From assembly GCA_028826165.1 (NCBI GenBank), contig JAPDFW010000060.1, positions 310,001 through 374,000 on the forward strand: DNA of 64,000 nt, written 5' to 3'. Position numbers and translations under genes: made by a program. The stretch comes from Anaeramoeba ignava BMAN. Taxonomy: Eukaryota; Protista; Anaeramoebae. Positions 11,609-52,800 of this stretch are shown piece by piece; position 1 is the stretch's first letter, and each line of letters opens with the position of its first letter. The notes under the pieces are model-generated. The model searched no databases. It was not told where the DNA came from and worked only from the letters and a program-made list of their open reading frames with translations.

Positions 11609-14600
11609 TTAAAATAATTTCTTCAATGAATCTTTAAGTAAATCTTTTGGTGTTGTTCCATTTTCAAATTTTTCATTTTCAATCCACCATATTCCTTCAA
11701 TTTTCAAATTAAAATTAGCAGTTGTTTTTTTCAATAATTCAATCATTTCTTTTGTAGTTGATTGATTTCGACAAAGAAAATGTAATGGAGAAAACTAAAA
11801 AATCAAAAATTACAAATTTAATTAGTTTTTTATAAAATACTTTGAATTAAATTTTACTCCCTTTTTGATTCCAAAAAAAATAAATAATTAATTAATTAAT
11901 TAATTAAATTTGAATATTTTCTTTCTTTTTACTTTCTAAAAAATTAAAATTTATTTTAAAAATTTTATTTAAAATTTCATTTAATTTATATTGATTTGAT
12001 TAAATTAAATCAATATAAATTAAATCAAATTAAATTCAAAAATTTACTTTCTAATTTATTCATTTTAAATGATTAAGAAAAAAATTTAAATTATATAAAT
12101 TTAAATATAAATTAATAATTTACTTTCTATTAAATAAAATTTTCATCATAAAAATACTTAAACTCTTGTTTTCTTTTTCTTTTTCTTTTCGTTTTTTTTT
12201 TTTTAAAATTATTATATACATCCTATTAAATTTGGAATTTAATAATCAAAAAAATTTATTGCTTTTTCTTTATTAAATTAATTTACATTCTTTTAATTTT
12301 TAAATTTTATTAATCCTTTTTTTTTTTTGATTTTTTGATTGATTAAATAATTAATATTTTTAAATACAATCTATTGAATAAAAATTTTTTTTTGGTTTTT
12401 TTTAATTATAATTGTGTAAATGATTTTTAATTTATTACCCATTGGTGATTGAAATCAACTCCTTTAGAAATTAAAACTAGAATCATATCTATTTTTAATT
12501 TATCATTCTTGAATAAATAATGAAGAGGAGACCACTAGAAAAAAAAAAGGATTGATGTTTTTTCTTGAATAAATTGATTTTGTTTCTTTTTTTTTTTTTA
12601 TTCAAAAAATTTTACTAACTTTTTATTTTATTAAATTATTTTCGAAAATAAAAATATAAAATATTTAAAAATAATTCCTTTTTTTACTTCCTATACAATT
12701 ATGATTTTATTAATATTATTAATTGATTTAAATTTTGAAAAAAAAAAATAAATTTACAAGCTGGATAATGTTGAAAATTTAATATTTTTATTATTTTTAT
12801 TATTTTTCCAAATTTACTTCCTAATTTTTTGATTTAAGATGATTTAATTTTCTAAAATAAAATAATTACATTCTTTATTATAATTGTAAATTTGAGAATT
12901 TTTTTAAAAAAAAAAAAAAGATGATTGATTGATTGATTGATTGGTTTACTTTCTGTTTTAAATGGATTGACTAATTAATGAAAAAAGAAATGAAAAAAAA
13001 AAAAGTTTGAAATTTACCAACTATTGTTGATAGATCATTTTAATAACAATTAATTATTATTTATAAACATGAAATATTCATTGATTATATTCTTAATTTT
13101 AGGTATTTTACTTTCTATTGAATAAAAAATGAATGTTATAATAATTATTTTGATTTTGAATGAATAAATTTATTGATTTTTTTTTTCTTATAAAAATAGA
13201 TTACATATGAAATATGAAAATCACCACCTTTTTTGAGTATTAATTTAATCATATTTGCTGTGATTGATTGATTTCTACATAAATCATGCAAAGGAGTATA
13301 CTTTTTTTTTATGTAAAACAAAATTTTTGTTTTTTTTTTAATTTTTGAAATTATAAAATGGTTTTTCTGTTTTTATTTATTTATACATCCTAAAAAAAAA
13401 TTTGGATTAATGTATTTTCAAAAATTAACTAATAAAAGATTTGTCTTTTTTTTACATACTAATTTAATTTATATTTTGTTAAAATCAATTGGAAATGATC
13501 TTTTTTAAATTTTATTCAACAAAAAAATCCATTTTTTTTACATACTGTTAAAAAAGAAGTTTTATAAATTTGATGTTTTCTTCTTCTTTTTTATAAATTA
13601 ATTTTATTTGAGATTTTTACATTCTATTTCAATATAAAAGAAACAAAAAGTTAATTTCCAAAATAATTTATAAACATTAAACAAAAAACTATTTTATAAA
13701 TATTTACTTTCTTTTTTAATACAAAAAATAAAATAAAGAATTGAATAATAATTTTGGAAATTTATTTATACATCCTATTTTGAATAAATATAAATATAAA
13801 TATAAAATGTTTTTGGAATTGAATTCAGTTTTTTTTTTTACATTCTGTTTTGCAAAATTTTTTTAAAAAAAATATTGTTTTTATTCATGAATCTTTTTTT
13901 TGTTAAATTATTTACTTTCTAAATTTTTTTTTCAAAATGAAAAAATGATTTTTATTAGATATATTGTTTCTATTTTCTTTCTTATTGATAATTGTAATGG
14001 TTTTTAAAAGTTTGATTTTAATTTGTGTTTGTTTGAAATGGATGCAAAAATAATTGATATTTTTTTTTTCAATTTTGGTTTATGATAATTTACATTCTAT
14101 TTTAATTCAAACAAGAAATGTATTCATTTCAGAAAATAAATTGTTAGAAAAAAATAATATAAAGTAATGTACCCACTATATTCAGAATTAAATTTATTTT
14201 TTTTGTATTTAAAATATTAAAAATAAATTTTTTGTTTTGATTATTTAGTTTATATTTTACGCGCTATTATTTATTAAGAATATATTGATTTAATTTTTTT
14301 TAAAAAAAAACAATCAGAAACTAAATGAGAAATGAAATTTACTCTCTAGAAAATTACAAAAGAAATGAATAAAATTTAAGGATAAATTGGATATAAGAAA
14401 ATAGGGAACGAAAAAATTTTAATTTTTGAGAAAATAATTACTCGCTAATTATTAATATTGAAATATCATTTGAGAAAAAAAAGTTGTTCAAAAAAAATAA
14501 AAGAATGAAAAACTTACACCACTTAAATTAAAATTAGCTCCTTTAAGAGCAAATAATTTGAGCATATCAAAAGTAATTCTTTCATTTCTACATAAGTAAT

Positions 14601-17600
14601 GAACTGCAGACCACTTTTGAGAATAGATTTAAATGTAAAAAAAAGAGAACGTTTGTTTATCATTAAAATATTTTTATGTTGAAGAAAAAAACTAAAATTA
14701 AAAAGTACTTTCTAGGAATTGTTTTTTTTTTTGAATAAATGAGAAAGAAATATGAATCAAGTTGGATTTATTTTTATATTTTTTTTTTTACATACTATTT
14801 TCAAAAACAAAAAGTAACAAAGATCAATAAATTTATTTCAAGCAAAAAAATGCAATGTTTGTTCATTTTTTTTTTACATTCTAATGAATAATATTTAGAA
14901 ATAATTTTATCATTCCAACTTCAAATTTAAATAATTTACATTTTGAATGTTTAAATTAATTCCGAAATCGATCAGTAATTTAATAATTTCGAAATTAATT
15001 GATTTATTTAGGCAAAAATAATGAAGTGGTGTTTCCTTTTTTAAAAGAAAAAAACATATATATTTGAATATTGAAAAAAATTACTCTAAATTTTAGGAAA
15101 AAAAAATTACTCCCTAAAACAAAATCAATTATTTATTTTTTAGAAATTTGATTTATAAATTATAAATTATAAATTTTTTACTTGCTTTTCCATTTCAAAA
15201 ATGAAAAATAAAAATCATTTGATTTGATTTTTTTTTAATTATTACTTTCTATTTTTTGTGTTTTTTGTTATTGTTTAAAAATATTTGGAAAGTGAATATT
15301 AAATAAATAAATACATCTTGTTTAGTTAATTGGGATTTTTTTTTTAATAATTTTTTCAAAATATCGAAATCAATTGTTTTTTGATTTGCAAAAAAATGAA
15401 GGACAGTTGGCTAATTAAGAAAAATGAAAGATGAGAATGTAAAGTTTTTTATAAAAACAAAAAAGTTGATTAAATTATTTACATATTTTGATTTTTTGGC
15501 TTCTTTTTTTAACAATTGGATATTCGTCTTTTGTGTTTCTATTAAATTTTCTATTGGAATAAATCAATAAATAATCGGAAAATTTTGAAATGATTTTTCT
15601 TTTTTGATGATTTACTTTTCCTTAATGTAAATTCCTTCTGAATTTCTATTTGTTTTGATTGTTTTTTTTTTAATTGATTAATTAATAAAAAATATTTTGG
15701 ATTAAAATGAATTGAAAAAAATTTTACCTTTTTTATCGAAACCCAAAACTTCTAAAGCTTGAATTCCTTTATTGTAAATTTCTTTATCCTCTGAAAAATT
15801 GAGCATTACTGAATTTATTATGTCAGATCCAAGATTGCCTTCAATTTGTTTTTTGTTTGCTTTTTTTTTTTGAGGGAAAATGTAATAATTTTTTGAATTT
15901 GAACTTGAATTTGAATTTAATTATTTACCTTTTTCTTTTCCAATATTAATAATAATTGAGAAAGATTGGAGTTGAAGAATTTTATTATTTGGAAACTGGA
16001 TCATTGTTGAGAAAATTAAATTAATTCCATTTAAATTTGGAAGATCAAATGAAATTGCTTTTTTTTTTTTTTGGATCATTTGAGAAAAAAAAGAACAAAT
16101 TTAAATTAAATTAAATTAAATTAAATTTTAAAAATGTATTTTCCAAATTACTCTTTTTTATATCAGTTAATTTTCTTAAAGCAAAACAACAAGCTTGTTG
16201 AATAAATTCATCTGATTTAAAATCCTTCATACTTTGGAAAATGAAAGAAATATCCATATCCATTAATTTCTTTTTTTTATCTATTTTTGTTTTAAATAGC
16301 AAATGAATTTTGGATTTGATTTTGGATTAAATTTTGAAATTTACTTTTGTCATTCTCTTCAATCGATTGATAAAGTTTTTTAAAGTAAATAGTTGCTTTC
16401 TTTTTTAATAAAGAATTTTGTTGTTCTTCTTTTTTTTCGGGAAATATATCCAGTTTATTTTGGTATTTATTTCGATGAGGTAAACTGTAAAAATTTTGTG
16501 CCAATTGGTTGTTTTGTTGAACAATTTTTTGATTAGTCTTTTTGTGTTTGAAAAATGAAAGAATTAATTTTCAAATCAAAATCAAAATCAAAAAGAAAAA
16601 GAAAATTTATTATTACCATTGTAGAATAGTCAAATTTGCTATTTTTATTTTGTTTGATAGGAATAACATCTTTTATTATTTTCGGTTTTTCTTTTTCATT
16701 TTTTTGATCTGATTCTTTTTCATTTTTTTGATCTGATTCTTTTGTTGAATCTGAATCTGAATCTGAATCTGAATCTGAATCTGATGTTGAATCTGAATCT
16801 GATGTTGAATCTGATGTTGATGTTGATGTTGAATCTGAATCTGATGTTGATGTTGAATCTGAATCTGAATCTGAATCTGAATCTGATGTTGATTTTGATT
16901 CTAAATATGTATCTGATTCTGTTTCTTTTTCTAATTCAGATTTAGATTTAGATTCTGATTCTGATTTAGATTTAAATTTTGAATTTAGATTTTGATTTAA
17001 GTTTTGATTTAATTTTGATTTTGATGATTTTGATTTGGATTTAGATTCTGATTTTGGTTTTGATCTTGAATCTAAATATGAATTTGAATCCAATTCTAAT
17101 TCTGTTTCTGTTTCTTTTCCAGATTTAGATTCTGATTTTGATTTTGATTTTGAATTTGATTTTGATTTTGATTTTGATTTTGATTTTGATTTTGATTTTG
17201 ATTCTAATTCTGATTTTGATTTTGGCTCTAAATTTGAATTTGAATATATTTCTACTTCTGATTCTGATTCTTTTGTTGATTCTGATTCTTTTGTTGATTC
17301 TGATTCTTTTGTTGATTCTGATTTTCTTTTGTTGATTCTAATTTTTTTGATTCTGATTCTTTTGTTGATTCTGATTTTGGATTTTGATTCTGATTCTTTT
17401 GTTGATTCTAATTCTTTTGTTGATTCTGATTTTGATTCTTTTGTTGATTCTGATTTTGATTTTGATTTTGATTTTGATTCTTTTGTTGATTCTAATTCTG
17501 ATTTTGATTCTGATTTTGATTCTAATTCTGATTCTGATTCTGATTTTGATTTTGATTCTTTTGTTGATTCTAATTCTGATTTTGATTTTGATTTTGATTC

Positions 17601-20040
17601 TTTTGTTGATTCTAATTCTGATTTTGATTTTGATTTGGATTTGGATTTGGATTTTGATTTTGATTTTGATTCTGATTCTGGCTCTGATTTTGATTCTTTT
17701 GTTGATTCTGATTTTGATTTAGATTTTGATTCTGATTCTTTTGTTGATTCTGATTCTTTTGTTGATTCTGATTTTGATTTTGATTTAGATTTAGATTTTG
17801 ATTCTTTTGTTGATTCTGAATCTGATTTAGATTTTGAGTTTAAATTTGCATTTAATTTTAATTCTGATTCTGATTCTGATTCTGATTCTGATTTTGATTT
17901 AGATTTAGATTTTGATTTTGATTTTGATTTAGATTTTGATTTTAATTGTGATTCTGATTCTGATTCTGATTCTGATTTGATTAATGAAGTTAGATTTGAT
18001 CTTAGTTCAGATTTTGGATCTAAATATGTTTTTAATTTTGATTTTAATTTTGATTTTAATTTTGATTTTTGTTTGGGTTTTATTTTGGATTGTTTTGAAT
18101 CTAGATATGAATCTTTTTTAATTTCTTTTTCTTTTTCTTTTGTTTTGGTTTTTTGAATTTTTCTTAATTTTGATTTTAGTTTTGATCTTGATCTTGGTTT
18201 CGGTTTTGATTGTAATTTTGGTTTTAATTTTGGTTGGGATTTTGATCTTGATTTTAATTCTGGTTTTAATTCTGGTTTTGATTTTAGTTTTGGTTTTGAT
18301 TTTGATCTTCCTTCTGATTTTAATTTTGATTTTGGTTGTTTTGATTTTAATTCTGATTTTTTTCTTGATTTTAATTCTGATTTTTTTTTTGATTTTGATT
18401 TTGGTTTTGGTTTTGGTTTTAATTTTGATTTTAATTTTGATTTTAATTTTGTTTTTGATTTTAATTTTGATTTTAATTTTGATTTTAATTTTGATTTTGT
18501 TTTTGATTTTGTTTTTGATTCTGATTTTAATTTAGATTCTGGTTTTGCTTTTGATTCTTTATCTAATTCTGATTGATTTATTTGTAATTTCTCGTTAAAA
18601 GGATTATCTTTAGCTTGTTCAATGTTCAATTGATTTGGAATTTGATTTGGAATTTGATTTGGAATTTGATTTGGAATTTGATTTGGAATTTGATTTGGAA
18701 TTTGATTCATAAATTGATTTGGAATTTGATTTGGAATTTGATTTTGGATTTGATTCATAAATTGATTTGGGATTTGATTCATAAATTGGTTCATAAATTG
18801 ATTCATGAATTGATTCTCTAAGTAATTTTAATTTTAATTTTAATTTTAATTTTAATTTTAATTTTATAAATGAATTTTATAAATGAATTTGAATTTTATA
18901 AATGAATTTTGATTTTGATTTTAATTTTAATTCTGAAAATTATTTACTTTGATTTTTCATATTATTTAAGTTTTCAATAAATTCATCCAATGAACATCTT
19001 TCTTTTGGAATTTTATTCCATCCCTTTTTAATTACTTCTGTTAATTGCTTTGGGAAATCATCTGGAAATTCGGGTCTTTCATCATTCATCAATTGCCTAA
19101 CAATCACCATTGGATTTTCATTTTCAAAAACTTTTTTCATTGAAAAAATTTCAAATAAAATGATCGATAAACTGAAAATATCACAAGAAATATCATAAGC
19201 ATTTCCTTGATTCAAAAGTTCTGGAGCTGAATAACCAAATGAAAATGAAACTGTTGTATTTTTCATTGTATGTTGTAAAAGTCTTGAAATTCCAAAATCA
19301 GTAATTTTAGGTTGATTATATGAAATCAAAATGTTTTCAGGTTTTAAATCACGATGAATAATTAAATTTTTATGAAGATAATTAATTCCCGAAACAATTT
19401 GTAATGAGAATTCAATTTTCTCATCATATGTTAAACTTGGGATTTTTTGTGATAAATTTCCTTGTTCTGCATATTCCATTAAAATTCCCAAAGTATTATC
19501 AAATTCGACCATTCCATAAACTCGAATAATATTTGGATGATTTAATTGAACAGCTAAAGTAAGTTCATTTTGAAATTGTTGTTTTAATTTTGGATCGTTT
19601 TGTATTCTCAATTTCTTCAGAACAACCTCATTAATTCCCCATTTTGCTTTATAAATATCAGCTGATCCACCATAAGCAAAAGGTTGGTTTTCAATATTAA
19701 GTTGAGATAAAGGAATAATTGGAGCATTTGGAATATTTGGATTATTTTGAATATTTCCATTATTTTGAATATTTTCATTATTTCCATTATTTCCATTATT
19801 TCCATTATTTTCATTATTTTGAACTGGCAAATTTTTTTGCATTTCTTCAATAACTTCTAATAAACCCCGATTTTGAATAACTTTGAAATTTTCTAAAGTT
19901 GTTCTGCAAAATGGACATTCTTCCATGTTTTTTAAACAATGTTCACAAATTGAATGTCCTGATTCACATACAATCATTGGTTTTCTTTGTTCTGAATAAT
20001 CTTCAAAACAAATTGGACAAGAATATGCTTTTAATTCCAT
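11609..20040 (-). CDS. Gene A: RING-HC + TKL-like protein kinase + low-complexity linker + ARM-like repeats + 6 ankyrin repeats with microexon-encoded loops
   Basis: Exons: 20040-18948 ([13 protein letters not shown]...CPFC RING; [16 protein letters not shown] kinase), 18817-16617 (S/K/E low complexity), 16537-16345, 16280-16152, 16057-15929, 15859-15728 (ARM-like: [64 protein letters not shown]), 15645-15616, 15550-15483. Ankyrin exons: 15410-15315 (PTVLHFFA), 15035-14940 (ETPLHYFC), 14613-14518 (WSAVHYLC), 13300-13205 (YTPLHDLC), 12534-12439 (WSPLHYLF), 11794-11609 (FSPLHFLC...stop). All introns are GT-AG and the phases join without stops. Confidence 0.85.
11858..15248 (-). other. Gene A single-codon (3-nt) microexon arrays, 34 microexons in 5 arrays
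   Basis: Plus-strand motif (T)AC-NNN-CT = minus-strand AG|NNN|GT. In transcript order, by lowest coordinate: K15246 Q15182 G15111; N14878 Y14792 K14709; R14442 R14343 R14261 W14173 N14094 K13916 N13842 D13772 K13708 N13621 Y13542 Y13456 D13387; K13112 L13018 K12950 N12870 E12818 L12758 E12688 L12616; I12368 N12287 D12220 K12124 K12048 K11933 G11858. Confidence 0.85.
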
Positions 20041-21640: not shown

Positions 21641-21739
21641 AAATTCAGAAATAATTCAATCCAAAAATTAAGTAAAATAATTTTGTGTTTTTGAATTTCG
21701 AAATTTTTTTATTCTTTTTTGAATTTGAAGAAAAAGAAA

Positions 21740-22045: not shown

Positions 22046-25000
22046 TTAAATCAGTTTTTGAAGATGATTAGGAAGAAAATCTTTTGGTGTTGTACCATAA
22101 GAACTTTTTATAGAAAAATCAGCATTGGTTCCTTTCAATAATTTAATCATTTCTTCTGATAATAATGGATTTTGACAAAGATAATGCAATACAGTTGCCT
22201 AAAAAACAAATATTTTTTTAAGATTTTTTTTAAGATTATTTTTTTGGATTAAATTTACTCCCTATTTAATTTTTAAATGATATATTTAATTCATTTGTTA
22301 TTTGGAAATAAATTTTATCTTATTATTTACAGGCTAATTAATTGAATTTAATAATAAAAAGTAAATCAAAATTTAATTTTTTAAATCAATTTACTTGCTA
22401 TTTAATCAATTATCCATTTTTTTATTTGGAAATCAAAAATGAATTTAATTAATTTGTTCTAAAAAAAAAGAATTAAATAAATTTATCATTTACTCCCTTT
22501 TATTTTTGGAAAAATTTTCAAATTAAAATGTTTGGAATCATTTAAAAAAAATTTTAAATAAATTTTTTACTTGCTATTAAGGAATTATTTTAAGAAGAAA
22601 AAAAGAAAAATTTAAAAATATCAAATTATTTTTGCATTTATTTACTTCCTATTTATTAAATTTTAATTTAAAGTTAGAATTTAGTTAAAATTTGAATTTA
22701 TTTTTATTTAGGAAATATTATTTATTTACATCCTATTTAGAATTTAAATTTAAAATTTAGAATTTAAATGAAAATTAAACTTGAATTTTAAAAAATTTTT
22801 TTTTTGATTAATATAAGATTTATTTACAATCTATTTAATAATTTTCAATCCAAATAAAAAATTTTAATAATTATCAAAGAAAAAAATTAAATAGATTTTT
22901 ACAATTTGTAAATTGAAATTTGATCCACCTTTAATCAAAATATCAATCATTTCTGTTGTAATTAGGTTGCTCAAGGATAGAAAATGAAGTGGAGAGTACT
23001 AAAAAAAATAGGAAGAAAATTAGTTAAATTATTGATTTTGATTTTGATTTTGAATTCATTTACTCCCTAAATTTTTTATTAAATTAAATTAAATTAAATT
23101 AAATTAATTTTATTTTATTACTCTCTGTTTATTCAATTAAAATATTATTTTTATTTTTAAATAATTGTTCAAAATTAAAAAATAATTTAAAATTTACAAA
23201 CTATTTTATTTAAAATTTAAGTAAGAAAAATATTTTATCATTAATTTTTATTAATTTGATTTACATACTAATTTTATTTCAATTTAATTTTTAATCTCAA
23301 AAAATATTTTTTTTGTTAAATTTTAATTAAAAATTTAAATGATTACTGCCTGATTATTTATAAAGAAAAAATATTTATATTAATTATTAAATCAAAAAAA
23401 AAGATTATTTACATCCTAAATTCATTAATAAAATTTAAGTTTAGTTGAATTTTTCTTTTAAACATTTCTAATTTTACTCCCTATTTGTTAAAATATTCCA
23501 TTAAATAAAAGGAAATCATTTCAAAAAAATTTTTTATCATTTCTAATTTACTTTCTGTTTCATAAAAATTAATAAGAAAAATGTTTATGATTAATTTCAA
23601 ATTTATTTTTGTTTTTATCTATTAATTATTTTACAATCTATTTATTATTATTTTTTTCAAAAAAAAAAAAGCAAAATTGAAAATTGAAAAAGAATTTAAT
23701 AACAAAAATATAAAAAAATCTTAAGATGAATAATTTACTTTCTATTTGATTTACATAAAAATTAAATCAAAAATTAATCTAATTTTAAAAAATTTATTAT
23801 AAATTTTTACCCATTGAATATGAAAATTAGCTCCATTATTAATTAATAATTCAACAATCTCTTTTGTAATTGAAGGATTATTACATAAATCATGCAAAGG
23901 TGTATGCTTTTTTATATGTAAAATAACAATAATAAAATCATTTTAATATTGAATAATTTAAAAAAAAAAATATTTTTCTATCGTTTTATTTTACATCCTT
24001 TTGTTTGTTTATTTTTTGGAATAATTAATTAATTCAAAATTTTTATCAATAAAAAAATGATTGATTTTATATTTTTTTTACAAACTAATTTTAAATTTTA
24101 TTATTTTTTTATAGGGAAATTATAATCAATTTAATAAGTAATTTTTGATTTTTTTTTTTGAATTATTTACATGCTATTTTATAAACACAAAAAAAATCAT
24201 TTCAAAAACAAATTAATAATTAAAATAAAAGAAGAAAGAATAAATTTAAATGATTTACATTCTATTTTTATTATTTTTATTATTTTTATTTAAAAAATAA
24301 ACACAATTTATTTGATAATAATAATAATTATTATTATTTTTACAGCCTATTTTTTTTTGGATTGGAAAATAAAAAGGATTAAAATTCTGAAAAAATATTT
24401 ACTTGCTAATATATTTAATTATATTTTAATATTATTAGAGAAAAAAAATATGTTTTTCCCTTTTTAAATAGTTTACTTGCTAAAATTATTTTGTTTTTCA
24501 ATGATATGTTTATTATTTCTCAAAAAAATTTAAGAGATAAAAATTTACTCCACTTAAATTCCAATTAACTCCACGTTGAACTAATGCATAAATCATTTCA
24601 AATGTAATTGATGGGTTTCTACACAAGTAATGAATAGGAGACATCTTTTAGAAATGTATGAGAAATGTTAAATTAATAAATATTATTGAAAAATTATGTG
24701 AATCTTAAGAAAAAAAGAAGAAGAAGAAAATGAATTACTTGCTAAAAATGAGTTTTGAGAAAAAGAAATTCAAATTCAATTCTTTTTGGATTTAAAAATA
24801 GTTAAATTTTTACAAACTATTTCCCATATAAAAAAAAGGGAATGAAAACAAAAATTAATTTTTTTTATCTTGAAATGATATTTTTTTACAGTCTATTTGG
24901 GAAATAATTTTGAAAAATTTTATCAAAAACTTGATTTCAAAAGAAAAGTTTAAATTAAATATTTATTTATTTACATTTTGAGAATTAAAACTATATCCTT

Positions 25001-28000
25001 TTTCCCTGAAGAATTCAATAATCTCTGTTGTTATTGATGGATTTTTAAAAAGATAATGCATTGGTGTATCCTTTTTTTTGTTTTATTTTAAATTTAGTTT
25101 CGATTTTTATTTTTATTATTATGATATTTTTTTACTTCCTTTTTTTTTTAAGAATTTTTTTTAAGATTTTAAGGAGCAAAAAAAAAACAAATTTTATTTT
25201 TACATCCTTTTTTTTTGGAATTCCAGAAAATAATAAATAAATTTTGTTAATTCAAATTAATAAGATTACTTTCTATTCAATTATTCATAAATAAAATTAA
25301 AAATGAAATTAAAAATAAAATTAAAAATAAATTTACTTCTTTAGAATAAAAATCGGTTCTATAATGTGCCACTAATTTAATGATTTCCAAATTTATTGAT
25401 GGATTTTGGCATAAATAATGTAATGGTGTTAACTTTGATTTTTTGATTAATTTAATTGAAAAGAATTTGGGATAAATAATTTAATTTTCATTTTATTATT
25501 TTTTTACTTCCTATTTCAATCATTTTAAAAATGAATAAATTTTTGATTCAATTCAATTTAGAAATCCTTTGTTATTTTTACATCCTTTTTATTTCAATTT
25601 TAAATAATTTTAATTTTTTAAATAATTTTTTTTTATGTGGTTTATTTTTTACTTCCTAAAATTTTCAATTTCGTTTTAAAAAAACAAAAAAAATGAATAT
25701 TTTTATAATCAATAACAAAAAAATCAAATTCAAAATTTACTCCTTTTAAATTAAAATTAGCTCTATAATCAAACATTAATATTATTATCCTCAAATTAAT
25801 TGATTCATTTTGGCATAAATAATGAATTGGTGTATTCTTTTTAAATATTTGAAGAAGAAGAAAAACAAAATTAATTTTAATTTTAAAATTAAAATATGAA
25901 TTACTTTCTAAAAAATAATATAAATTAATTCAAATAAATTTAAATAAATATTTTAGATAAAAGTGTTTTTTGTACAGCTGCGGTTTTTTGGAATATAGTC
26001 TACAAAATAAAAAGAAAGATTAAAATAAGTTGAAATTTTTAGATTAGATCAAAGATTTGTTTTTTGATTTAGAATTACTTTCTAGATTTTTATAATTTTA
26101 ATATTTTTTTTTTAAAAAAAGGAATTAAAATTTAATAAGAAAAAAATGTTTTGTTTTAGATATTTGAATAAAATAATTTATACATCTCGTTTAGTGACTT
26201 CTGATTTTTTTTTCAAAAAAATTTGTAAAATTCCAAAATCAATTTCTTCGTTCTTTTTTGCATAGAAATGAAATAAAGATTCCTAAATTTTTTAATCAGA
26301 AAAAAAACAAACATTTTTGAAATGTTGATTAAATGAATTTTCTTCTCAATTGTTTTTTTTTAAAATTTTATTTGGAAGAAAAAAAGTTTACCTGTGACCA
26401 AACATTGAAAAACTATTTTAAAACAAAATAAAAATAAATAAATTAATAAATAAATGAATAAATAAATGAATAAAATAAATAAATAAATAAATGAATGAAT
26501 TCTTGTTAAAAATATGTGATTTACATATTTTTTTTTATTAAATTCTTCTTGTAATGCTTTTAATTTTTTTTGATCTAGTTTTTCTACATGACCTAATAAA
26601 AATAATTTCATAATTTTTCAAATTAAAATTTTTTCTTTTTGATTTTGGAAAAATGAAACAATATTTTTACTTTTCTTTAAATTAAAGTTTCGAGTAATAT
26701 CTATTTTGTTTTTCAAATAATTAGATTAAAATAAAAGAAAGGAAAATTAATTAATGAATTATTAAAATGAAAAAAGGAAAAAGATTGGATTATCTATTTT
26801 GTTTTGTTTTGTTTTGTTTTTTATTGAAAAATATAAATTTACAATTTTGACCAAATTCTAAACGTGTTAAAGCTTCAGTTCCTGTATAAAAAATCTTATT
26901 ATCTTCTGGAAAATTAGCCATTGTTGAAAATATTGTATCATCTCCAGAATATTGTTTAATTTGGCTTCGATTTACTTTGGTTTTTGATTAATTAATTTTT
27001 TTGATTAATTAATTTTTTTGATTGATTAATTTTTTTGATTAATTAATTTTTTTGATTGATTAAAATGAAATTTACGACTTGATTTTCCCATTTGAAAAAG
27101 AATTAGTAAAGATTGAAGTTGAAGAAATTTTTTGAATGGAAAATTATTCATTGCTTTGATAATTAAATCAAATCCATTAAAATCTGGAAAATTAAATGAA
27201 ATTCCTTTTTTTTTTTGGAAAGAAAAATTAATAGAGTTTTGAAAATTAAAATTAATTTAACAATTTTTACTTGTTTCTGCTTCAGTGAATTTTCTTAGAG
27301 CCATACAACAACTTTCTTGAATAAATTCATCTATTGGAAAGGCATTCATAGATTGAAAAATAAAATTAATATCAATTTCTTCTAATTTTTCTGAGGTATC
27401 TTTTTATTAAAAAATGGAATAAATTGGATTAATTCATTTTACACATTTTTTCATTTGATTTAAACAATATGAATAAATATTTACTTTGATCATGTTTGCG
27501 AATTGAATCTCGAAGTTTTTGGAAATAGGGTTTAAGTTCTTTTAATGCATTTTTTTTTGCTTCTTCAGATTTTTTTTTTTCTTTTTGGATTTCCAAAGTT
27601 CGTACTTTTGCTATTACTTCATCAAGTATTTTTTGTGCAGTCTAATTGTTTTGTATTATTTTTTTTTTGTTGAAATGGAAATGATTGAAAATTTAATCTT
27701 TTTTTTTTTTATATTTCTTAAATATCAATGTTTTACCTTCAAATCAACTTCTGATTCTGATTCTGATTCTGGTTCTGATTCTGATTCTGATTCTGATTCT
27801 GATTCTGGTTTAATTTCATTTGATTTGTTTTGTTTTGAATCTTGTTCATTTGAAGGATTTGATCTGTTTTGGTTTTGGTTTTGGTTTTGATTCTGATTCT
27901 GGTTCTGGTAGGATTAATTTTGTTTCGATTTCATTCATCTCCTTTTTAACGATATTGTCTATATAATTGATTTGTTCATTTGAATTTTGTTCATTTGAAT

Positions 28001-29660
28001 TTTGTTCATTTGAATCTTGTTCATTTGAATTTTGTTGATTAGAATGGATTTGATCTGTATTGATTGGTTTTGGTTTTGGTTTTGGTCCTGGGTTTGGTTT
28101 TGGTTTTGGTTTTGGTTTTGGTTTTGGTTTTGGCTCTATTGTTGAATCTTGGTCATCAATGTGAAATGAATAACGGTGATTTTTATTGGAATCGTGTGTG
28201 TTTGAATTTTTGAATTGTTGTTTCATTGTTATTTAATTTATCATTTGAAGGTCTTGGTCTTGGTCCTGGTTTTGGTCTTGATCTTGGTCTTGGTCTAATT
28301 GCTGTATTTGTTCTTGATCTTTGCTGATTGGAACTCTGTTCAAATCTCTTTAAAATTGATTGAAAAGAATTTCTTGTTCTTGGTATTCTTGGTTTTTTTC
28401 TACTAAGATCATCTTTATTTTTTGGATTCATTGGATGATTGGGTGATATTATTGGTTTTTTTTCTTCTTCAATTATTAGTTCTACTTCTATTTTTGTTGA
28501 ATTTTATTTTAATTTTTGTTGAATTTTATTTTAATTTTTGTTGAATTTGATTTTAATTTTTGTTGAATTTTATTTTAATTTTTGTTGGATTTTATTTTAA
28601 TTTTTGTTGAATTTGATTTTAATTTTTGTTGAATTTTATTTTAATTTTTGAAATTACCTCCATTTTTCATCATATTCAAACATTTAGTAAATTCATTTAA
28701 TGAACATCTTTCTTCTGGATTTGGACTCCATCCTTTTTTGATTAATTCACTTAATTTTTTTGGGAAATTAATGGGAAATTCAGGTCTTTCTCCTTGCATT
28801 ACTTTTACTGGAATAGCCATCCCATTTTCATTTTCAAAAGGTTGTTTCTTTGAGAAAATTTCATATAAAATCATTGATAAACTGTAAATATCGCAAGATC
28901 TATCATATTTGTTTCCTGATTCAAGCATTTCTGGAGCAGAATAACGGAATGAAACTATAACTGAAGTAACTTGCAAAGTGTGTTCTCTTACTTTTGAAAT
29001 TCCAAAATCAGTAATTTTTGGTTTATTATTTGAAATCAAAATATTTTCAGGTTTTAAATCACGATGAATAATTAAATTTGAATGTAAAACTTCAATTCCT
29101 TTAATAATTTGTAAAGAATATTCAATTTGTTCTTCAAATGTTAAATTTGGAATTTTTTGAGATAAATCTCCTTGTTCTGCATATTCCATTACAATTCCCA
29201 AAACATTATTCATTTTAGTTTTCCCATGGATTTTGATAATATAAGGATTATTTTTTAATTTCATTCCTAATTTAATTTCGTTTTCAAATTGTTGATTTCT
29301 TTTTTCATCATTTAGAAATATTAATCTTTTGATAACAACATCTTTTTCTTTCCATTTTGCTTTGAAAATTTGAGCAGTTCCTCCTTTAGCAAATGGTTCT
29401 AATTCAACTTCCAATTCTGATAAAGGAATAATTGGAATAATTGGCTCATTTGAATTTTTTTGAATTGATTTAATAAATGCTAATAAAGATTCGTTCATAA
29501 TTGGTTTAAAATTTTTGAATGAACTTTTACAAAAAATACAATGATCCGTTTTTGTTACGCAAAAAGAACAAATATTATGTCCTTCTTTGCAAATAACCAT
29601 TGGTTTTCTTTCATTTGAATAATTTTCAAAACAAATTGGACAAATTTCTGGTTCTTCCAT
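22046..29660 (-). CDS. Gene B: RING-HC + TKL-like kinase + Pro/Lys-rich linker + ARM-like repeats + 8 ankyrin repeats with microexon-encoded loops; two apparent +1 frameshifts in the linker exon
   Basis: Exons: 29660-28658, 28487-27737 (frame breaks near 28210 and 27870), 27641-27485, 27399-27271, 27204-27076, 26974-26843, 26700-26671, 26592-26525, 26412-26392. Ankyrin exons: 26282-26184, 25836-25741 (NTPIHYLC), 25432-25337 (LTPLHYLC), 25070-24975 (DTPMHYLF), 24644-24549 (MSPIHYLC), 23906-23811 (HTPLHDLC), 22998-22903 (YSPLHFLS), 22198-22046 (ATVLHYLC...stop). The exon pattern is colinear with gene A. Confidence 0.8.
22259..26081 (-). other. Gene B single-codon microexon arrays, 36 three-nt microexons in 7 arrays (plus a possible 24-nt exon)
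   Basis: Transcript order: K26079 [possible 25976-25999 TIFQKTAA] K25905; E25653 D25582 E25508; K25270 D25204 E25136; T24890 F24814 Q24739; Q24477 Q24403 A24344 N24259 H24171 F24082 D23995; K23739 I23635 K23552 G23478 D23413 A23347 Y23265 F23198 R23122 G23064; I22828 D22730 E22646 Q22571 G22494 Q22395 P22331 G22259. Confidence 0.85.
28490..28655. repeat. 22-bp tandem repeat (AATTTTTGTTGAATTTTATTTT) filling the first intron of gene B
   Basis: About 7 direct copies are visible. Confidence 0.85.
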
Positions 29661-43883: not shown

Positions 43884-46800
43884 TTAAAACAATTTTTTGA
43901 GAGAATCTGGAAGTAAATCTTTTGGTGTTGTTCCATCGCGAAACATTGTATCTCCAATTTTCCATTTTCCCTGTATTTTCAAATCGAAATCAGCATTTGT
44001 TCCTTTCAGCAATTTGATCATTTCTTCTGTAACTGATGGATTTCTGCAAAGATAATGTAACGGAGAAAACTAAAAAAAATTTTGGTTTTGAATTAATTTA
44101 TCAAAAAGAAATGATTATTTTTTTGATTAAATTTACAGACTATCGAATTTTGGAAAAAAATAATCAAAAATTTAAATTTTTTTTTTCTTCTTTTTTATTC
44201 ACATTCTAGTTAATTCAATTTAATCCAAATAATCATGGATAAAAGATAAAAAAAATATTCTGTTTTTTCTCTTTCTTTGATCTGTTTTTTTTTTTAGTTT
44301 TACTTGCTATTTGTGATATTGAAAAAAAAGAATTGTATATTAACTTTTTGCATTAAAAAGTGAAAAAATCGAGATTGTTGAGAAATGATTTACAGGCTAT
44401 TGAAAACGAATTCAATAAGAATATTTGGATGGAAAAAAATCAATCAAATTATAAAGAAGTAAAATAATATTTTTAGATTTATAATGAAGAATAGAAATGA
44501 AAACCAAAACTTTGATTTCAATAACAATAATTTTATTTACTTTCTATTAAAAACAAATTTTTTTCGGAATGTTAATTCCAAGAAAAAAGGATAGAAAAAT
44601 GAACAATAAAAAAATTCTAATAGATTTACTGAGACCTAAAAAAAAATTTAAGAATTTCACATTTTATTTGAACAAGAGAAAAAAAAAATTTATTCACAAA
44701 CTAATGAAAAGAAGAAATATTTGCATTTAAAAGAATTTAGAAAAAAAAATTGTATTTACAATCTATTGAACAAAAAATTAAAAAATTGAATCAAATGGCT
44801 TATCAAAATCATGTTGTTTACAAGCTTTTGAGAAGAAAATATATATGAAATCAAAAAAGAAATTTAAAAAAAATGGAATGAAATGATTAAGAAAAAAGCA
44901 TTTTCTTTACGTACTATTTCAAAAGAAAATGGGAAAAGAGATAAAAATGTTATATGAAATTGATTTCACTTTTTCCGAGCAAAAAAATAAATTCAACCCA
45001 ATTCATTCTTTGGTTTCGGCAACTGTCTGTTTTCTAATCAGAAATACTCATTCTATTCGTAGGTTTAGGGAGTTTTTCAAAAAATAAAAAAATTTTCATT
45101 TTCATTTTTTTTCTTCTTTTTGCAATGAATCTACAACCAATCATTTCTCGAATGTTAAAAAAAATTGATGATCTCGATGAGAAAATGCAAAAGAAGTATG
45201 GAACTCCTGTGAAAATAAAAGAAAAAAATACAATTATCTAAAAAAAGCCCAATGAAAATACTTTGGAATTAGGTTTTCATGAAAGAAAATCCTTTAATCC
45301 TAAAAAAAATGTCTAGTTTGCATCTTCCACAATTTAATCAAGTTTATGGAATTGTCAAATCAAGCATCCAACCTTTTTTTCAAAAATCCCAAGAAAAATT
45401 CATTTCAAAAAAGAATGTGTTGTTGATTGTCCTCATTCATCTAAGAAAATATTATATTTTTGAAGATATGGTTAGTTTCTTTGGAATCAGTTTGTCTTCT
45501 CTTCACAAAATCATTCAGGAAAATATGAAAAGAATGGAAAATGCTCTAATTAAATGGCAAATTTATTGTATCTGTAAGATATGTAAGAAAAGAAAAACTT
45601 CTCCAATGTATATTTTTTCGTGAGATTACTTTTCAGGTTAAGAAAGGTCACTCCTTTTTGAAAAGAACTCAAATTAGCCGGGCTAGTTTGTTAACAAAAT
45701 TTCAAGAAGTGATAAAGGAATTTCGCCTAAGGAAAAATGTTGTTGTTCTCAATCTGAGGAAGATCGATCTCACAATTACACAATGTTGGTGTTGAAGATT
45801 CAAAAATTGTTCAATGAAAGAGTGGGGATAGAAATTTGGGTAGTTTATTATCTTATAAAAGACCTAATTTAGAGGTGGAGTTTGAAGTTAATTTCATTCC
45901 CAGACCTAGGACTGAGAAAAAATGGTTTTCAGAGAATGAAGCTAGTAGAGATGCAGGAATCACATTTTTCTCCCCAAATTATGTGGAATTCCATAATCAA
46001 ATTCTTCTCTCTATTACGAATCGGTTACAAGAAATGGAAATTAGAGAAGATAAATTCGCAAGAAAATTAGTGATTCATTTCAAAATCGATCCCTATTCAA
46101 AAAGGAATAACGAAATTGATCAAAACAATAATAAAACAAAGTAGATGGATCAGATCATAAAATGATAATCAAGATAATAAAATATAAGCGTCAGAAAGAC
46201 CAAAACTAGGGGAAATTAAGTATAATAAAGCATTCAAAAAAGATTTAGAAAAGAAATTAAAAAAAAAACGATTTTAACCTTACTAAAAGCACAATGAAAA
46301 AATGCTTCAAAAAACAACAAAATCCCAAAAGAAGAAAATTTTTAAAAAGAAAATAAGGATTATTACAATCTCCTTCAATAAAAAAGAATCCAAAATGAAA
46401 AATTTTCTTTTTTTTTTCTGAATAATAAATTTATTTACAACCTATTTAAGGAAAAATTTCAAGATGAGAAAAATATTATTATCATGAATAAAACAAAGAA
46501 TAATAAATAATATTTATTTGATTTTGGTTTGAGTGAATTAATTTCCAATATTAAAAGTATTGATATTTACAATCTAATTAATAATTCCACATTCCAAAAT
46601 AAGTAATTGACAAATTCATTAAAAATTTCTTTTTTTCGTTTTTTTTTTACTTCTTGGAAATTGAAATTGACTCCTTTATTAATCAAAATCCTAATCATAT
46701 CTATTGTAATTGATGTATTTTGGCATAAAAAATGAAGTGGAGATTGCTAAAAAAATGAAAAGGGAAATTAATTTCGATATTGATTTTGGGAAATTTAAAT

Positions 46801-49800
46801 TTGAATTTACAAACTATTGTTAACGAAAGCATTTTATTTATTTATTAATTTTAGAAAAAGAATTTAAAAATATTTTCAATCTTTGGAAATCAAATTTTCT
46901 ACTCTCTATTTATTTACAAATTATTTTTTTTTGAAACAAAATTCATTTGAATTTAGTGGATCTCGAAACTTTCCAAAATAAATTTACAGACTTATTTTAT
47001 AAAAAAAAAAATATTTCAAACGGATATAAAATTGTTTATATTTCTTTTTCGGATATATGAATTGAATTACTTCCTATTTTAAGTGAAACCAATTTATTTT
47101 GTTTAATAAATAATCTGAAATCAGCATTTTAGTTGAAAATATCTGAAGAGTAGATTAAGAGAAGTATTTTTTCTTCAATTTTTGCCTCCTTCAAATATTG
47201 AAATTCCAAAATAGTAATTTACATCCTATTATAATAAAAAAATAATTTTGAATTTGATTTATATTCCGCACCTTTATATATGTGAATTTCGAATGAGGAA
47301 AAATGATTTGAAAAGAAAAAATTTCATTTTCATTTTTCATTTTCATTTTTTTTCTTCTTTTTGCAATGAATCTACAACTAATAATTTCTTGAATGTTAAA
47401 AAAAATTGATGAACTCGATGAGAAAATGCAAAAGAAGTATGGAACCTCCTGTGAAAATAAAAGAAAAAAAATACAATTATCTAAAAAAAGCCCAATGAAA
47501 ATACTTTGGAATTAGGTTTTCATGAAAGAAAATCCTTTAATCCTAAAAAAAATGTCTAGTTTGCATCTTCCACAATTTAATCAAGTTTATGGAATTGTCA
47601 AATCAAGCATTCAATCTTTTTTTCAAAAATCTCAAGAAAAATTCATTTCAAAAAAGAATGTGTTGTTGATTGTCCTCATTCATCTAAGAAAATATTATAT
47701 TTTTGAAGATATGGTTAGTTTCTTTGGAATCAGTTTGTCTTCTCTTCACAAAATCATTCAGGAAAATATGAAAAGAATGGAAAATGCTCTTTCCAAATGG
47801 CAAATTTATTGGATATCTAAGACACAACAAGAAAATCAAAACAAAACATCAAAATTCCCGATTATTTGGATGAAATTTGTGTTATAGATGCGACCGTTCA
47901 AACATGTCTCAAGCCTAAAAATAATAATGTTCAATCTCTTTATTATTCGGGAAAACATAAATTTCATTGTGTTCAATCCCTGACTATGCATGTCCGCAAT
48001 GGGATATAGATAAGATTTATAATAGAAATTTCAAGCTCTCACCTTGATAAAAGAATTTAGGATTCAAATAACTGATGAAAATTTTGGAAATCAAAACAGA
48101 AAAAAAAAATTCAATCCAAATTATATCAAGTTTCCCAGCAAAATTGTTTGACAAGAAAATGAGCTTGACTTCTGCATGATTAAAAAAAATCATTAATTTG
48201 AATTTTTTTTAGAGAAAAAAAAGCATCAAGAAGAATGAATTTATATATCGCACTCCTCAATTTAGTATCAGTTTATTATATATCCTCCTAAGGTAACACA
48301 ATTCGAGACAAGGATAAAAAATGAGACACAAAAAAAACTCATTTCTCACAATAGTAACGAGTAAGAAAAAATGTCTCAAAAAAGAGCTCAGAAAAGAGTT
48401 AAAAAAATTTTTTGTTATTAATAGAAAAAAATTGAATTTGATCTCCAGAAATAATCCCTTGTAAAAATTGTTTATTTTCAAATATCGCTCATTTATTCAA
48501 GAAGAGTACTTTCTAACAAATATATTTATAAAGACAGGGATATCTTTTGGAAAATTGCTAGAATTTGCCTAAAGAAGATTTAATGAATAAGATCAAATTG
48601 TTTTTTAAACCAATTTTTTTCTTTTTCCATGATTTCCTAATTCTGGTGGTTCAATTTCATATCGTAATCCTATTCATATTTTCTATTTCTATTCTTTTTT
48701 CACAATTTTTTTTCATGAATGATTATTTACATTCTATTTAATAACATTCAAAATTATAATTTCATCAAAATAAATGCTGATAAAAAAATGATTGATTTCA
48801 AGAAATTTCTTCAATAAATTTATTTACCCACTATTAAATAATATTTCGAGGCAAGAAAAATAAAAAAAAGATTATTTTAATAAGATGTGATGAATTCGAA
48901 TTTCACAAAAAAATCCATTTATTTTATTATTCTTCAATAAGATATTTTGAATCTCATCATTTTTTAAGAAATTTCTTTTCTTGAATTTGCTTATTTAATT
49001 CATTTTGGTTTCAATTTCAAATAATTTACTTTCTAATGAAAATTCAAAATTCAAAATCGAAAATCAATTTTTGGTTTTTTTTTGAACAATATTTATGGAA
49101 ATAATCAATATGGATTTATCATTAATTCAAATAAAAGAAAAATTGGCAAATCAATAATATTTTAATAAAATGAGGAAAATTGAATGATTTTTAAGTTTTT
49201 TTTCAATAATATTTTGTTTTTTCTTTGAATTGTTTACAAATTGAATTTGGAAATCAGCTCCATTATCAAGTAATAATTGAATCATTTCTTTTGTGATTGA
49301 ATTATTTCTGCATAAATCATGTGAAGGTGTAAACTTTTTGTTTTTTAGAAATACAAAAAAATTATTTTAACAATTAATAAATTTTAAGAATTTGATTTAA
49401 GTGAAATGAGTGCAAGAAGTTAAAAAAAAGCAATTTCATATTCTCATTTTTATTGTAGCAATTTTCGAAATCAAAATTCCATTTTTCCTTGATTATTTCT
49501 TATTATTAGAAGAAAACTTCCAATAATTGGTATTATGGAAATATTTTTGGAAAAATAACATCTTTTCTATAAATCATATTAATCCAAAATCTTGGGCAAT
49601 TTCTTGAAAAATTTTGAATTATTTATTTTACATTCTAATTATTTAGCAATAAATTAAAATAAATATTTGAATCAAAAAAAAACTTATAGTTGTGATTTTA
49701 AAACGAGGCACATCCGATTAATTTTCTCAAGATGAGTTGTCCAATTTTTTTTGTTTATTTTTTCTATTTTTCTTTTCTTTTTCTCTTTAAGTTTGTTATT

Positions 49801-52800
49801 TGTGAGCTTTTTTACAATAATTTCATTTTAAATTTCTCTATCAATGTTTTCACTTTCTTCGTTGAATTTGGTTTCACATTATCATTTTGATTTCCGTTTG
49901 GTTAATTTTCAAATGCCTGTAAGGAAAATATTAAGGAAATGAATCAAAAAATCTGATCCTTTTTCAATGAATTTGCCTTCTAAATTTAACTTCAACAAAT
50001 TAACTCCCTCCTCTCAAAATCCTGTTGAAAAATCTTTAGAAATTTCTCGATTGAAAAATGAAATCAATAATAAAAACGGTTTAGGTTTGTTTGATGTAAA
50101 TATTCTTTTATTATTTTTTTTTGGATTACAAAAAGTTTTGATTTGAAGAAGGAGGGAAGTTTGAATGATCCTAAAGGATGAAAAAGAAAAAGAAAAAGAA
50201 AAAGAAAAAGAAAGAAGGTTTTTTTATCTTGTTGGAGTATCTGGGTTTGAATTCGTCATACCGCCATATAATCACAACCATAAATAGGTTTTTTTTTAAA
50301 AAATGAATTCTTCGTTTTTTTAAGTTAAATACATACTATTTTTTTTTCATTTGAATTTTTTTTTTACAAAAAGAAATTAGACAAATTCCTAAAAAATAAT
50401 GAAAAAAAAATGAAATGATAGTTTACAGTCTATATTTCAATGATATTTTTTTTGGTAAATAAAAATTAGAATGATTATAATGCTAAGAATAATTTAAATT
50501 TAATAGTTTTGTTTGTTTTTTGTTTCGGGTTTTTACTTTCTGTTGAAAAATTTTGAAAATTAAATTATTGTAAAAATATAATAAAAAAAGAAAATGATTT
50601 GAAAAAATGAATATCATACATCCTATTTTAATCCAAAATAAAAACAGGTGTTTAGTTGATTAAATTCATAAATAATCTTTTTTCTGATTGAAATTTATTC
50701 TTTTACTTTCTATATTTTTTAAAATGAGTTTTTTTGAGAGTTTTAAAAAGGACAGAAAATTTAATCCATTTATTTTTGATATTGAGTTTTACTTTCTAAA
50801 AAATGTGGGAAAAAGTTTAATTTGAATTTTGGTATCAACAAAAAATTTTATAAGGAAATTAGCGAGGCATATAATAAATGGGAAAGGAAATAAATTGAAC
50901 GAAGATGATAAAAATTTGTAGTTTTTGTATTTAATTTGTAATTGATAATTTTTTCAAAAACAAGAAAAAAAATTATTTTCATTATTTACAAACTATGTTA
51001 AGTAAAAAGAAAAAAGAAAAAAGAAAAAATGTTAAATCCGAAAATTTTCTTTTTCAAAATGAATGTTTATTTACAATCTATTTCCGAAAAAATAAAATTT
51101 GGAAGGTTGTTTAATAAATTTTGTTTTGTTTTTGAATTGTTGGAAATCAAGATGTAAAAAAAGAGAAAGACAAAATGAGTTTAAATTTCTCCCATTTCCA
51201 ATGTTTCTTTTCTCTAGAGATTCATGGATAGGTGGATATCTTTTAAGAAAATTCTTTGAGAAGTAAATATTTCTTGCTTCTCATATTATTCCAAAAAAGG
51301 AAATTTGGAAATAATTGCATTTTCTTGAAGAAAATATTCAAAAATGCTTCAAATATGTTTTACATCTTGAACTTCCTTAAAAATATGGAATAAATCAGTA
51401 ATTTAATTTATATTAATATTTTACAGGCTTTTTTTATGATTAAGAAAGCAATAATTTAAATAAATCGCTTTAACAAAAATGGAAAAATAGTGAATTATAT
51501 AAAATTTACTGCCTATTATTGGATTTATGTTCAAAAAAATATTAAAATCATAACAATGTAAGTTTGAAATCATTTTTTTTTTCTTTTGGAAAATCCTACT
51601 CTCTATTATTTATTAATTCATTTATTTAAATAAATTTGAATATTTTGATGTTTTAAAAGAAACAGAGAATAAAAAACAGAATTCATTTCAATGTTTTTTT
51701 CAGTAATTTTATCTGTAAAAAAAATTAAAAATATTCTCAAAAAAAAGGAAAGAAAAAAAAATTTACTCCACTTAAATTAAAATTAGCTCCATTATCAACT
51801 ACTAATTTAATCATATCAAACGTTATGAATTTATTCCTGCATAGATAATGAACTGGTGACCACTTTTTGTTTTGAAAGAGAGAAGAAAATAGCAATAAGA
51901 ATTTTCTGGAATTGTGTTTTTAATATTCAGAAAAATTACATTCTAAAATTTTTTGATTTTTTTTGAAATATTTTATCATATCAATATTTGGAAATGATTT
52001 TTTGTTCGCTCTTAATTTTTTAAAAAAAAAAGCAAATTCATTTTACATACTATTTTAGAGAAAAAAATTAATCATGAAAAAAGAAATTTTTTTTGTTGTT
52101 TTTTTACTTTCTATTTCAGTAATTTAAAATCAGAAAGAAAAATGGAATATAAGCGATATATTTTTTTTGCAATTAATAAAAATTATCTAATTTTAATTTA
52201 TAAGAAATTTTGGAAATGGAATTCATTTTACATCTTGTTTATTCCAATCAATTTGTGATCGAATAAAATGATTAAAAAGATACATATTAATTGGTTCCTT
52301 AGTTGCAAAATAATGCGATAAAGTTGCTTGTTTATCCTTGATTTGTTTAACGTTGAGTTTAAGTGAATAAACAAAAAAACAAAGTTTGGTTTTTGGGAAT
52401 TGTTTGTTGATTGAATGAAAAAATCAAACCATCTTTTTCTAAATTTCCAAAAAAAAAATATTTAATAAAAAATTAGCTTCGAATTTTCTCTTTTTTTCAG
52501 AAGAAAAAAAAATTACAAATTTTGATTGATCAAATTCCTCCTGAAACATTTTTAATTCTTCTTGAAAATCAAGAGTATCTAAGTTCAAATGAGGAAATGG
52601 ATGTGAAATTTGGTTTGTGTGTTTTGATCTTTTTTTTGATTTTTTTTTTGATTTTTTTCTCGATTCTTCAACAAATTTGAAGTATTTGAGTGGAACTCGT
52701 CCTGTTTTTCTATTGAGGATGGCATCACCCCATCCATCTTGATGTTTCGCAGTTATTTTTAGTTTATCTCCTTGTGAAAATGATAATTCTGATGAATCTC

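What the first reader, a model, noticed from the sequence alone, without database searches (positions are those of the whole stretch)
11609..52336. Ankyrin loops spelled one codon per exon: about 105 single-codon microexons in three RING-kinase-ankyrin paralogs, a candidate splicing-based diversification system
Seen in sequence: the apparently non-coding AT-rich stretches between ankyrin exons are chains of short GT-AG introns separated by exactly 3 nt (minus-strand [T/A/C]AG|NNN|GTA..). Counts: 34 in gene A, 36 in gene B, 34 plus one 6-nt in gene C. They occur only at the junctions between ankyrin-repeat exons, all are phase 0, and none is a stop codon despite the extreme AT richness. Established knowledge: this junction is the ankyrin beta-hairpin loop, part of the target-binding surface that is randomised in DARPins. 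Inference: any subset of microexons keeps the frame, so skipping could change loop length and sequence one residue at a time (up to 2^28 inclusion patterns for the 28 long-loop microexons of gene A, fewer distinct peptides because codons repeat). That would be a Dscam-like or VLR-like repertoire for an intracellular sensor coupled to a kinase and an E3 ligase. I do not know of a described system with long runs of consecutive 3-nt exons. Standard gene finders and aligners would miss them.
Basis: partly seen in the sequence, partly recalled or inferred. Interest (0 to 1): 0.97.

Follow-up and report, generated by a model that had tools for sequence, protein, structure and literature searches.

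The report
Single-codon exons build ankyrin binding loops
Three kinase-ankyrin genes of the anaerobic amoeba Anaeramoeba ignava write the loops between their ankyrin repeats one amino acid per exon (105 three-base exons). An RNA-derived protein of a sister gene shows such exons are spliced in, and the same layout was already reported in truffle immune receptors, so this looks like an independent second case, with diversification by exon skipping still unproven here.

Summary
The minus strand has 105 [T/C/A]AG-NNN-GTA sites against 3-18 for other spacings (A 34, B 36, C 35), between 96-nt phase-0 ankyrin exons, none a stop (about 9 expected). The genome is Anaeramoeba ignava; it has roughly 2,000 excess sites of one strict pattern.

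They are real exons at family level. A transcriptome-derived protein of a sister gene contains all 14 + 8 predicted codons in order, paralogues keep the AG/GT, and three-codon junctions restore the 35-residue period of intronless relatives. NCBI models of sister genes omit them.

Skipping as a repertoire is unshown: no RNA run was listed, the one transcript is all-in, and long-loop splice sites are not weaker. Loop diversity is visible between paralogues (4-31 codons).

It is not unprecedented: Tuber melanosporum NACHT-ankyrin receptors have tens of alternatively spliced codon-sized exons (Iotti 2012, seen only through four citing papers). The scan found this layout before on other DNA of this genome; the truffle names were in none of its notes. 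Verdict: new, apparently convergent variant of a known kind.

The parts
18948..20040 (-). Gene A exon 1: RING finger plus Ser/Thr-Tyr-like protein kinase
   Evidence: Pfam zf-RING_5 and RING_UBOX over cut-off, Pkinase E 1.7e-51; ends at a GT donor, phase 1
16617..18817 (-). Gene A exon 2: about 730-residue low-complexity linker (NQ, SK, SE repeats)
   Evidence: open frame with matching phases
15483..16537 (-). Gene A ARM-like exons (six exons; three of 129-132 nt, phase 1)
   Evidence: phases consistent; weak ARM_LRRK2 match below cut-off
11609..15410 (-). Gene A ankyrin region: exons 15410-15315, 15035-14940, 14613-14518, 13300-13205, 12534-12439 and last exon 11794-11609
14709..15248 (-). 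Gene A short arrays: three single-codon exons each (K,Q,G and N,Y,K)
   Evidence: restores the 35-residue period of intronless paralogues
13387..14444 (-). Gene A long array 1: 13 single-codon exons; one double-length intron of 175 nt
12616..13114 (-). Gene A long array 2: 8 single-codon exons
11858..12370 (-). Gene A long array 3: 7 single-codon exons
28658..29660 (-). Gene B exon 1: RING-kinase
27737..28487 (-). Gene B low-complexity exon 2; no single open frame in this assembly (208- and 28-nt duplications relative to the sister copy at G000:C61:388-396 kb)
26392..27641 (-). Gene B ARM-like and linker exons (seven)
22046..26282 (-). Gene B ankyrin region: eight ankyrin exons, 36 single-codon exons in arrays of 2,3,3,3,7,10,8, and one 24-nt exon (25999-25976)
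53083..54076 (-). Gene C exon 1: RING-kinase
52517..52992 (-). Gene C 47-nt linker exon (52992-52946) and SH3 exon (52837-52517)
   Evidence: SH3_1 E 2.7e-13; phases
43884..52336 (-). Gene C ankyrin region: five ankyrin exons, 35 single-codon exons in arrays of 3,12,9,11, one 6-nt exon (44635-44630), several enlarged introns
45050..46350 (.). Insertion in a gene C array intron; part matches the tyrosine-recombinase-like ORF at 62496-63878 (73%); boundaries approximate
47330..48450 (.). Second insertion in a gene C array intron, sharing about 500 bp (95%) with the first; boundaries approximate

Best explanation
The triplets are genuine one-codon exons, removed from their short introns by intron definition and mostly all included, so each gene makes one dominant protein: RING E3 ligase, kinase, linker, ARM or SH3, then ankyrin repeats. 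N-terminal repeats keep a fixed three-residue hairpin; the last three junctions carry long, aromatic-rich loops like antibody CDR or LoopDARPin loops. Because each loop residue sits in its own intron-plus-codon unit at phase 0, the germ line can lengthen, shorten or recode a loop one residue at a time without breaking the frame (unit duplication, splice-site loss, codon change). Diversity is therefore held mainly across paralogues and alleles, with skipping adding minor variants. Shown: the layout, inclusion in one sister transcript, conserved splice sites, loop variation between paralogues. Inferred: inclusion in genes A-C, growth by unit duplication in ankyrin genes, and a role as intracellular non-self sensors.
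For: EukProt transcriptome protein P0055 (A. ignava c20457_g1_i1.p2) has all 14 and all 8 predicted codons of locus L013 in order; its 90% cluster has one member. Gene B versus its C128 paralogue: 34 of 34 sites keep AG and GT at 9.3% divergence. Eleven sister loci: 485 sites on the sense strand, 14 antisense, 0 stops. Three-codon junctions recur (KDG, NYK, KYK) and match the 3-4 residue loops of intronless genes. Long-loop sites score no weaker than short-loop ones (donor 2.64 vs 2.12, acceptor 0.97 vs 0.37); inner codons have 4.0 bits entropy and 18% Y/W/F against 4%. Homologous loops range 4-31 codons; single units are lost by small mutations. Young arrays elsewhere have near-identical introns with different codons. 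The model of P0055 puts the codons in the inter-repeat loops of an ankyrin fold.
Against: No RNA for genes A-C. One assembled contig shows only the majority path and cannot exclude frequent skipping. Strict 3-nt, phase-0 units are also what selection for skipping would give, and the truffle system is reported to be extensively alternatively spliced. In close paralogue pairs the codons change at about the intron rate (6.9% vs 8.8%; 3.0 vs 3.5; 7.3 vs 6.0), so positive selection is not established. Introns within these arrays are no more alike than shuffles.
Confidence: 0.58

Rival explanations
1. Truffle-like splicing repertoire: long-loop codons are skipped often, stochastically or under regulation, so one gene yields many binding-loop variants in a cell or population.
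For: Every unit is frame-neutral. The same layout in Tuber NACHT-ankyrin genes is reported as extensively alternatively spliced. Double-length introns of 144-175 nt exist, so a skip-sized intron is plausible. Long loops look like paratopes.
Against: 22 of 22 included in the only transcript; no second isoform among the proteins found; long-loop splice signals are not weakened; terminal codons and three-codon junctions are conserved. Unit duplication alone explains phase 0.
Confidence: 0.3
2. Non-adaptive intron proliferation: a duplicating intron-plus-codon unit spread in tolerant loops; the exons are kept only because the protein needs its residues, with no role in diversification.
For: Cloned-intron arrays exist in the genome; codon divergence is near the intron rate; copies carry frameshifts and transposon remnants; many intronless ankyrin genes do without the layout.
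Against: In this window the arrays are confined to the binding loop; long loops are enriched in aromatic residues; by hand tally 17 of 18 codon changes in close pairs alter the residue (weak, as third positions abut the donor); apparent convergence with fungal immune receptors.
Confidence: 0.1
3. The triplets are not exons (chance, recursive splice points or assembly artefact), and ankyrin exons join directly as in the NCBI models.
For: NCBI models of sister genes join the 96-nt exons directly.
Against: Transcript-derived P0055 contains them; strong strand-specific enrichment with no stops; direct joining gives 32-residue repeats lacking the hairpin, whereas intronless relatives have 35-36.
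Confidence: 0.02

Closest known systems
[quoted passage not shown] 2012, Fungal Biol 116:261, PMID 22289772; not held, read only as cited in PMC4986451, PMC13449251, PMC9815663, PMC3689799)
   Same: Expanded ankyrin-repeat gene family, tens of 3-bp exons per gene, proposed diversification of the recognition domain.
   Different: A metamonad protist rather than an ascomycete; RING-kinase-ARM/SH3 in place of NACHT; skipping is reported in Tuber but unshown here, where the one transcript is all-in. Whether the truffle exons lie in the same hairpin could not be checked.
Schistosoma micro-exon genes (MEGs; PMC10526429)
   Same: Runs of small, mostly frame-preserving exons giving protein variants.
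   Different: MEG exons are mostly 15 bp (3/6-81 bp) with introns of 0.1-5 kb and encode secreted proteins. Here exons are uniformly 3 nt, introns about 75 nt, confined to loops of a folded intracellular domain.
Plant and animal microexons, including 1-3 nt exons (PMC8831610; cytohesin glycine exon PMC6314551)
   Same: Exons this small are spliced and are routinely missed by annotation.
   Different: Those are isolated exons or small clusters, not runs of 7-31.
Dscam1 and VLR (own knowledge); brown-algal repeat-per-exon LRR/TPR receptors (PMC3341825, PMC11378527, abstracts only)
   Same: Receptor diversity from modular exon or repeat units; here too one repeat per 96-nt phase-0 exon.
   Different: Dscam uses mutually exclusive domain-sized exons and VLR uses somatic DNA assembly; neither feature is seen. 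Units here are single codons included together.
DARPins and LoopDARPins (engineered; PDB 4k5c among fold matches)
   Same: Ankyrin scaffold with variable or extended hairpin loops as binding surface.
   Different: Engineered; here natural, with 35-residue repeats and loops of 4-31 residues.

Membership tests
Ankyrin repeat proteins | Repeat with TPLH-type motif and helix-turn-helix-hairpin fold | tested here: met
   Pfam Ank/Ank_3 hits on single window exons, two of four over cut-off; model of sister protein matches DARPins and tankyrase
RING-kinase fusion | N-terminal RING finger and protein kinase domain in one exon, spliced in frame to the ankyrin part | tested here: met
   (RING over cut-off in A, below in B and C); phases continuous in A and C, broken in B exon 2; sister NCBI model P0009 has the fusion
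Tuber nank-type codon-sized mini-exon system | Tens of 3-bp exons in ankyrin-repeat region of an expanded family | tested here: met
   34-36 per gene; 485 sites in 11 sister loci; 40 kinase matches at E<=1e-60
Tuber nank-type codon-sized mini-exon system | NACHT (NLR) nucleotide-binding domain | tested here: not met
   Pfam scans of the window exons tested and of sister models show RING, kinase, SH3, ARM-like and ankyrin, no NACHT
Tuber nank-type codon-sized mini-exon system | Extensive alternative splicing of the mini-exons | not testable with these tools
   No RNA run listed; one assembled sister transcript is fully inclusive
Schistosoma MEG | Secreted protein made mostly of 6-81 bp exons with long introns | tested here: not met
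   Multidomain protein starting with a RING finger; 3-nt exons, 49-129 nt introns
Dscam-type | Arrays of mutually exclusive domain-coding exons | tested here: not met
   Consecutive units are co-included in P0055
VLR-type | Somatic DNA assembly from flanking cassettes | not testable with these tools
   One assembly only; no incomplete germ-line gene or cassette library seen in the window

The most novel reading that the evidence does not exclude
A single-celled metamonad uses stochastic or regulated skipping of one-codon exons to make a large repertoire of ankyrin binding loops on kinase/E3 sensors, evolved independently of the truffle system: an anticipatory, antibody-like intracellular receptor repertoire in a protist that houses bacterial symbionts.
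Probability: 0.3. Interest if true: 0.87.

Novelty: new variant of a known kind. Interest (0 to 1): 0.66.

Why it matters
It is an extreme gene structure: 14 consecutive 3-nt exons are spliced in a sister transcript and runs up to 31 are predicted, which tests how a spliceosome handles minimal exons. The NCBI A. ignava models inspected lack the very residues likely to bind targets, and about 2,000 sites genome-wide may be affected. The layout appears to have arisen twice, in ankyrin-containing candidate sensors of truffles and of a metamonad, which hints at an evolvability advantage. It makes directly testable whether unicellular eukaryotes diversify recognition proteins by splicing.

Tried and rejected
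Three homologue searches and one profile search found one transcript-derived family member and none for genes A-C; P0055 has no contig on record. Recent duplication inside the window's arrays: not detected. A clear branch-point motif: none. Hypermutation of loop codons: not supported in close pairs. Arrays in A. flamelloides: none in six ankyrin genes, a small sample. Iotti 2012 is not held. No paper joins Anaeramoeba with microexon. The tool's reversed-pattern control is not a fair null in this AT-rich genome; other spacings were used instead.
Full report
Source. The window is G000:C61:310001-374000 of a 42.8-Mb, 147-contig assembly. Sister genes match NCBI proteins of Anaeramoeba ignava on contigs of identical length, so the genome is A. 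ignava BMAN, described as 80.65% A+T with 91.86% A+T introns (PMC11550330).

Observation. On the minus strand [TCA]AG-NNN-GTA occurs 105 times; other spacings from 0 to 15 give 3-18 and the plus strand 6. Counted between ankyrin exons there are 34 sites in gene A, 36 in B and 35 in C, with one 6-nt and one 24-nt exon besides. Most flanking introns are 49-129 nt, median 75.5. No triplet is a stop, against 8.7 expected from intron trimers (P about 1e-4), and G+C by codon position is 0.40, 0.23, 0.05 against 0.13 in introns. Genome-wide, TAG-N3-GTAAA occurs 2,597 times against 645, 361 and 548 for N2, N4 and N6. Eleven sister loci give 485 sense-strand sites, 14 antisense and no stop.

Gene anatomy, exon by exon. 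Each gene opens with a RING-kinase exon. Gene A continues in frame through a low-complexity linker and ARM-like exons to six ankyrin exons. Gene C has a 47-nt exon, an SH3 exon and five ankyrin exons, with two insertions in array introns; one is related to a tyrosine-recombinase-like ORF in the window. Gene B has eight ankyrin exons, but its second exon has no single open frame because of 208- and 28-nt duplications relative to a near-identical copy about 15 kb beyond the window; that copy has its own frameshifts. These may be real lesions or errors of a Nanopore-based assembly.

Are they exons? Four lines say yes. (1) P0055, a EukProt protein from the A. ignava transcriptome, comes from a sister gene at C73:176485-178503 and contains all 14 and all 8 predicted single codons in order between its 96-nt exons. 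(2) Gene B and its C128 paralogue differ at 9.3% of aligned bases yet keep all 34 AG/GT pairs; about 12 base changes would be expected if neutral. (3) Three-codon junctions such as KQG, KDG and NYK restore the 35-residue period of intronless ankyrin genes in the same genome, whose loops at that position are 3-4 residues. (4) The predicted structure of P0055 (mean pLDDT 91.7) is an ankyrin fold with these residues in the inter-repeat loops. NCBI models of sister genes join the 96-nt exons directly and so lose the loops. No transcript of genes A-C was reachable, so for them inclusion is inferred. P0055 is labelled a complete ORF although it starts at an internal Met; that suggests an upstream stop in the assembled contig, for example a retained intron (inference).

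How it works. Exon definition cannot span 3 nt (established knowledge), but 75-nt introns can be defined on their own, and removing them in any order yields the inclusive message (inference). The family has two classes of junction: fixed 2-4 codon hairpins in the N-terminal repeats and three long loops at the C-terminal end, 4-31 codons across paralogues, often with conserved first and last residues. Inner long-loop codons are diverse (4.0 bits) and aromatic-rich (18% against 4%), as in paratopes. Close paralogues differ by codon changes and by loss of single units through small mutations that leave a double-length intron. Elsewhere in the genome young arrays have near-identical introns around different codons, pointing to tandem duplication of an intron-plus-codon unit (host genes not read; earlier scan notes place such arrays in TLDc loops). 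The window's own introns are no more alike than shuffles, so its arrays are old. Unit duplication explains the strict 3-nt, phase-0 pattern without needing skipping.

Skipping. Nothing here shows it. The single transcript is all-in, no second isoform was found, and long-loop splice sites score slightly higher than short-loop ones. Against that, one contig shows only the majority path. Codon divergence in close pairs is about the intron rate, as is that of the ankyrin exons; 17 of 18 codon changes alter the residue (hand tally), which is only suggestive. I put a mainly inclusive, germ-line-diversified system at 0.58 and a splicing repertoire at 0.30.

Known systems. These genes work like that system in layout but are not members: no NACHT, a distant lineage, and skipping untested. 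They are not Schistosoma MEGs, Dscam or VLR. No paper links Anaeramoeba to microexons. Six A. flamelloides ankyrin genes lack arrays, so the trait may be limited to the A. ignava line.

Earlier scan notes. The scan has reported this layout in many other windows of this genome, including the same sister transcript. I re-derived the transcript match and the counts. The words Tuber and nank occurred in none of its findings.

Verdict. Real, large-scale and missed by the annotation inspected; an apparently convergent new variant of a known kind; diversification by skipping remains open. Interest 0.66.

Noticed in passing
G000:C1:409309-413053, 942330-942793, 1058000-1073200 (minus strand): Long single-codon arrays whose introns are near-identical while the codons differ; young arrays grown by unit duplication. 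Host genes not read.
   Followed up: partly
window 587-11482 (+): Intronless 3,631-residue ORF with no Pfam hit; language-model look-alikes are Hobbit/BLTP bridge-like lipid transfer proteins, score 0.90, a lead only.
   Followed up: partly
window 20128-21645, 34616-35741, 38864-39841, 42949-43351, 54138-55687, 58712-60188: A family of about 144-bp, extremely AT-rich tandem arrays between genes; inverted orientation on the two sides of gene C.
   Followed up: no
window 35868-38687, 39957-42788 (-), 55818-58652 (+): Three similar intronless ORFs of about 940 residues with 273-bp internal repeats; the first has FG-GAP and fibronectin type III domains.
   Followed up: no
window 60979-63878 (-): Tyrosine-recombinase-like ORF (62496-63878, Phage_integrase E 3.4e-5, below cut-off) and an unknown ORF; probable transposon, with a remnant inside gene C.
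   Followed up: partly
L001/L002 (G000:C61:388-396 kb, +): Inverted near-identical copy of gene B: identical loop codons at 34 sites, intact exon 2, but frameshifts in ankyrin exons.
   Followed up: yes
L009:3487-5756 (G000:C104, +): A sister gene has 31 consecutive single-codon exons in one junction.
   Followed up: partly
L015-L020 (G000:C42 and C79): Near-identical ankyrin genes spread over tens of kb with multi-kb introns; neighbouring DNA differs by 1-3% while three of eight compared loop codons differ.
   Followed up: partly
window 15728-16280 and 26843-27399 (-): ARM-like repeats are also one repeat per exon (129-132 nt, phase 1), without microexons.
   Followed up: partly
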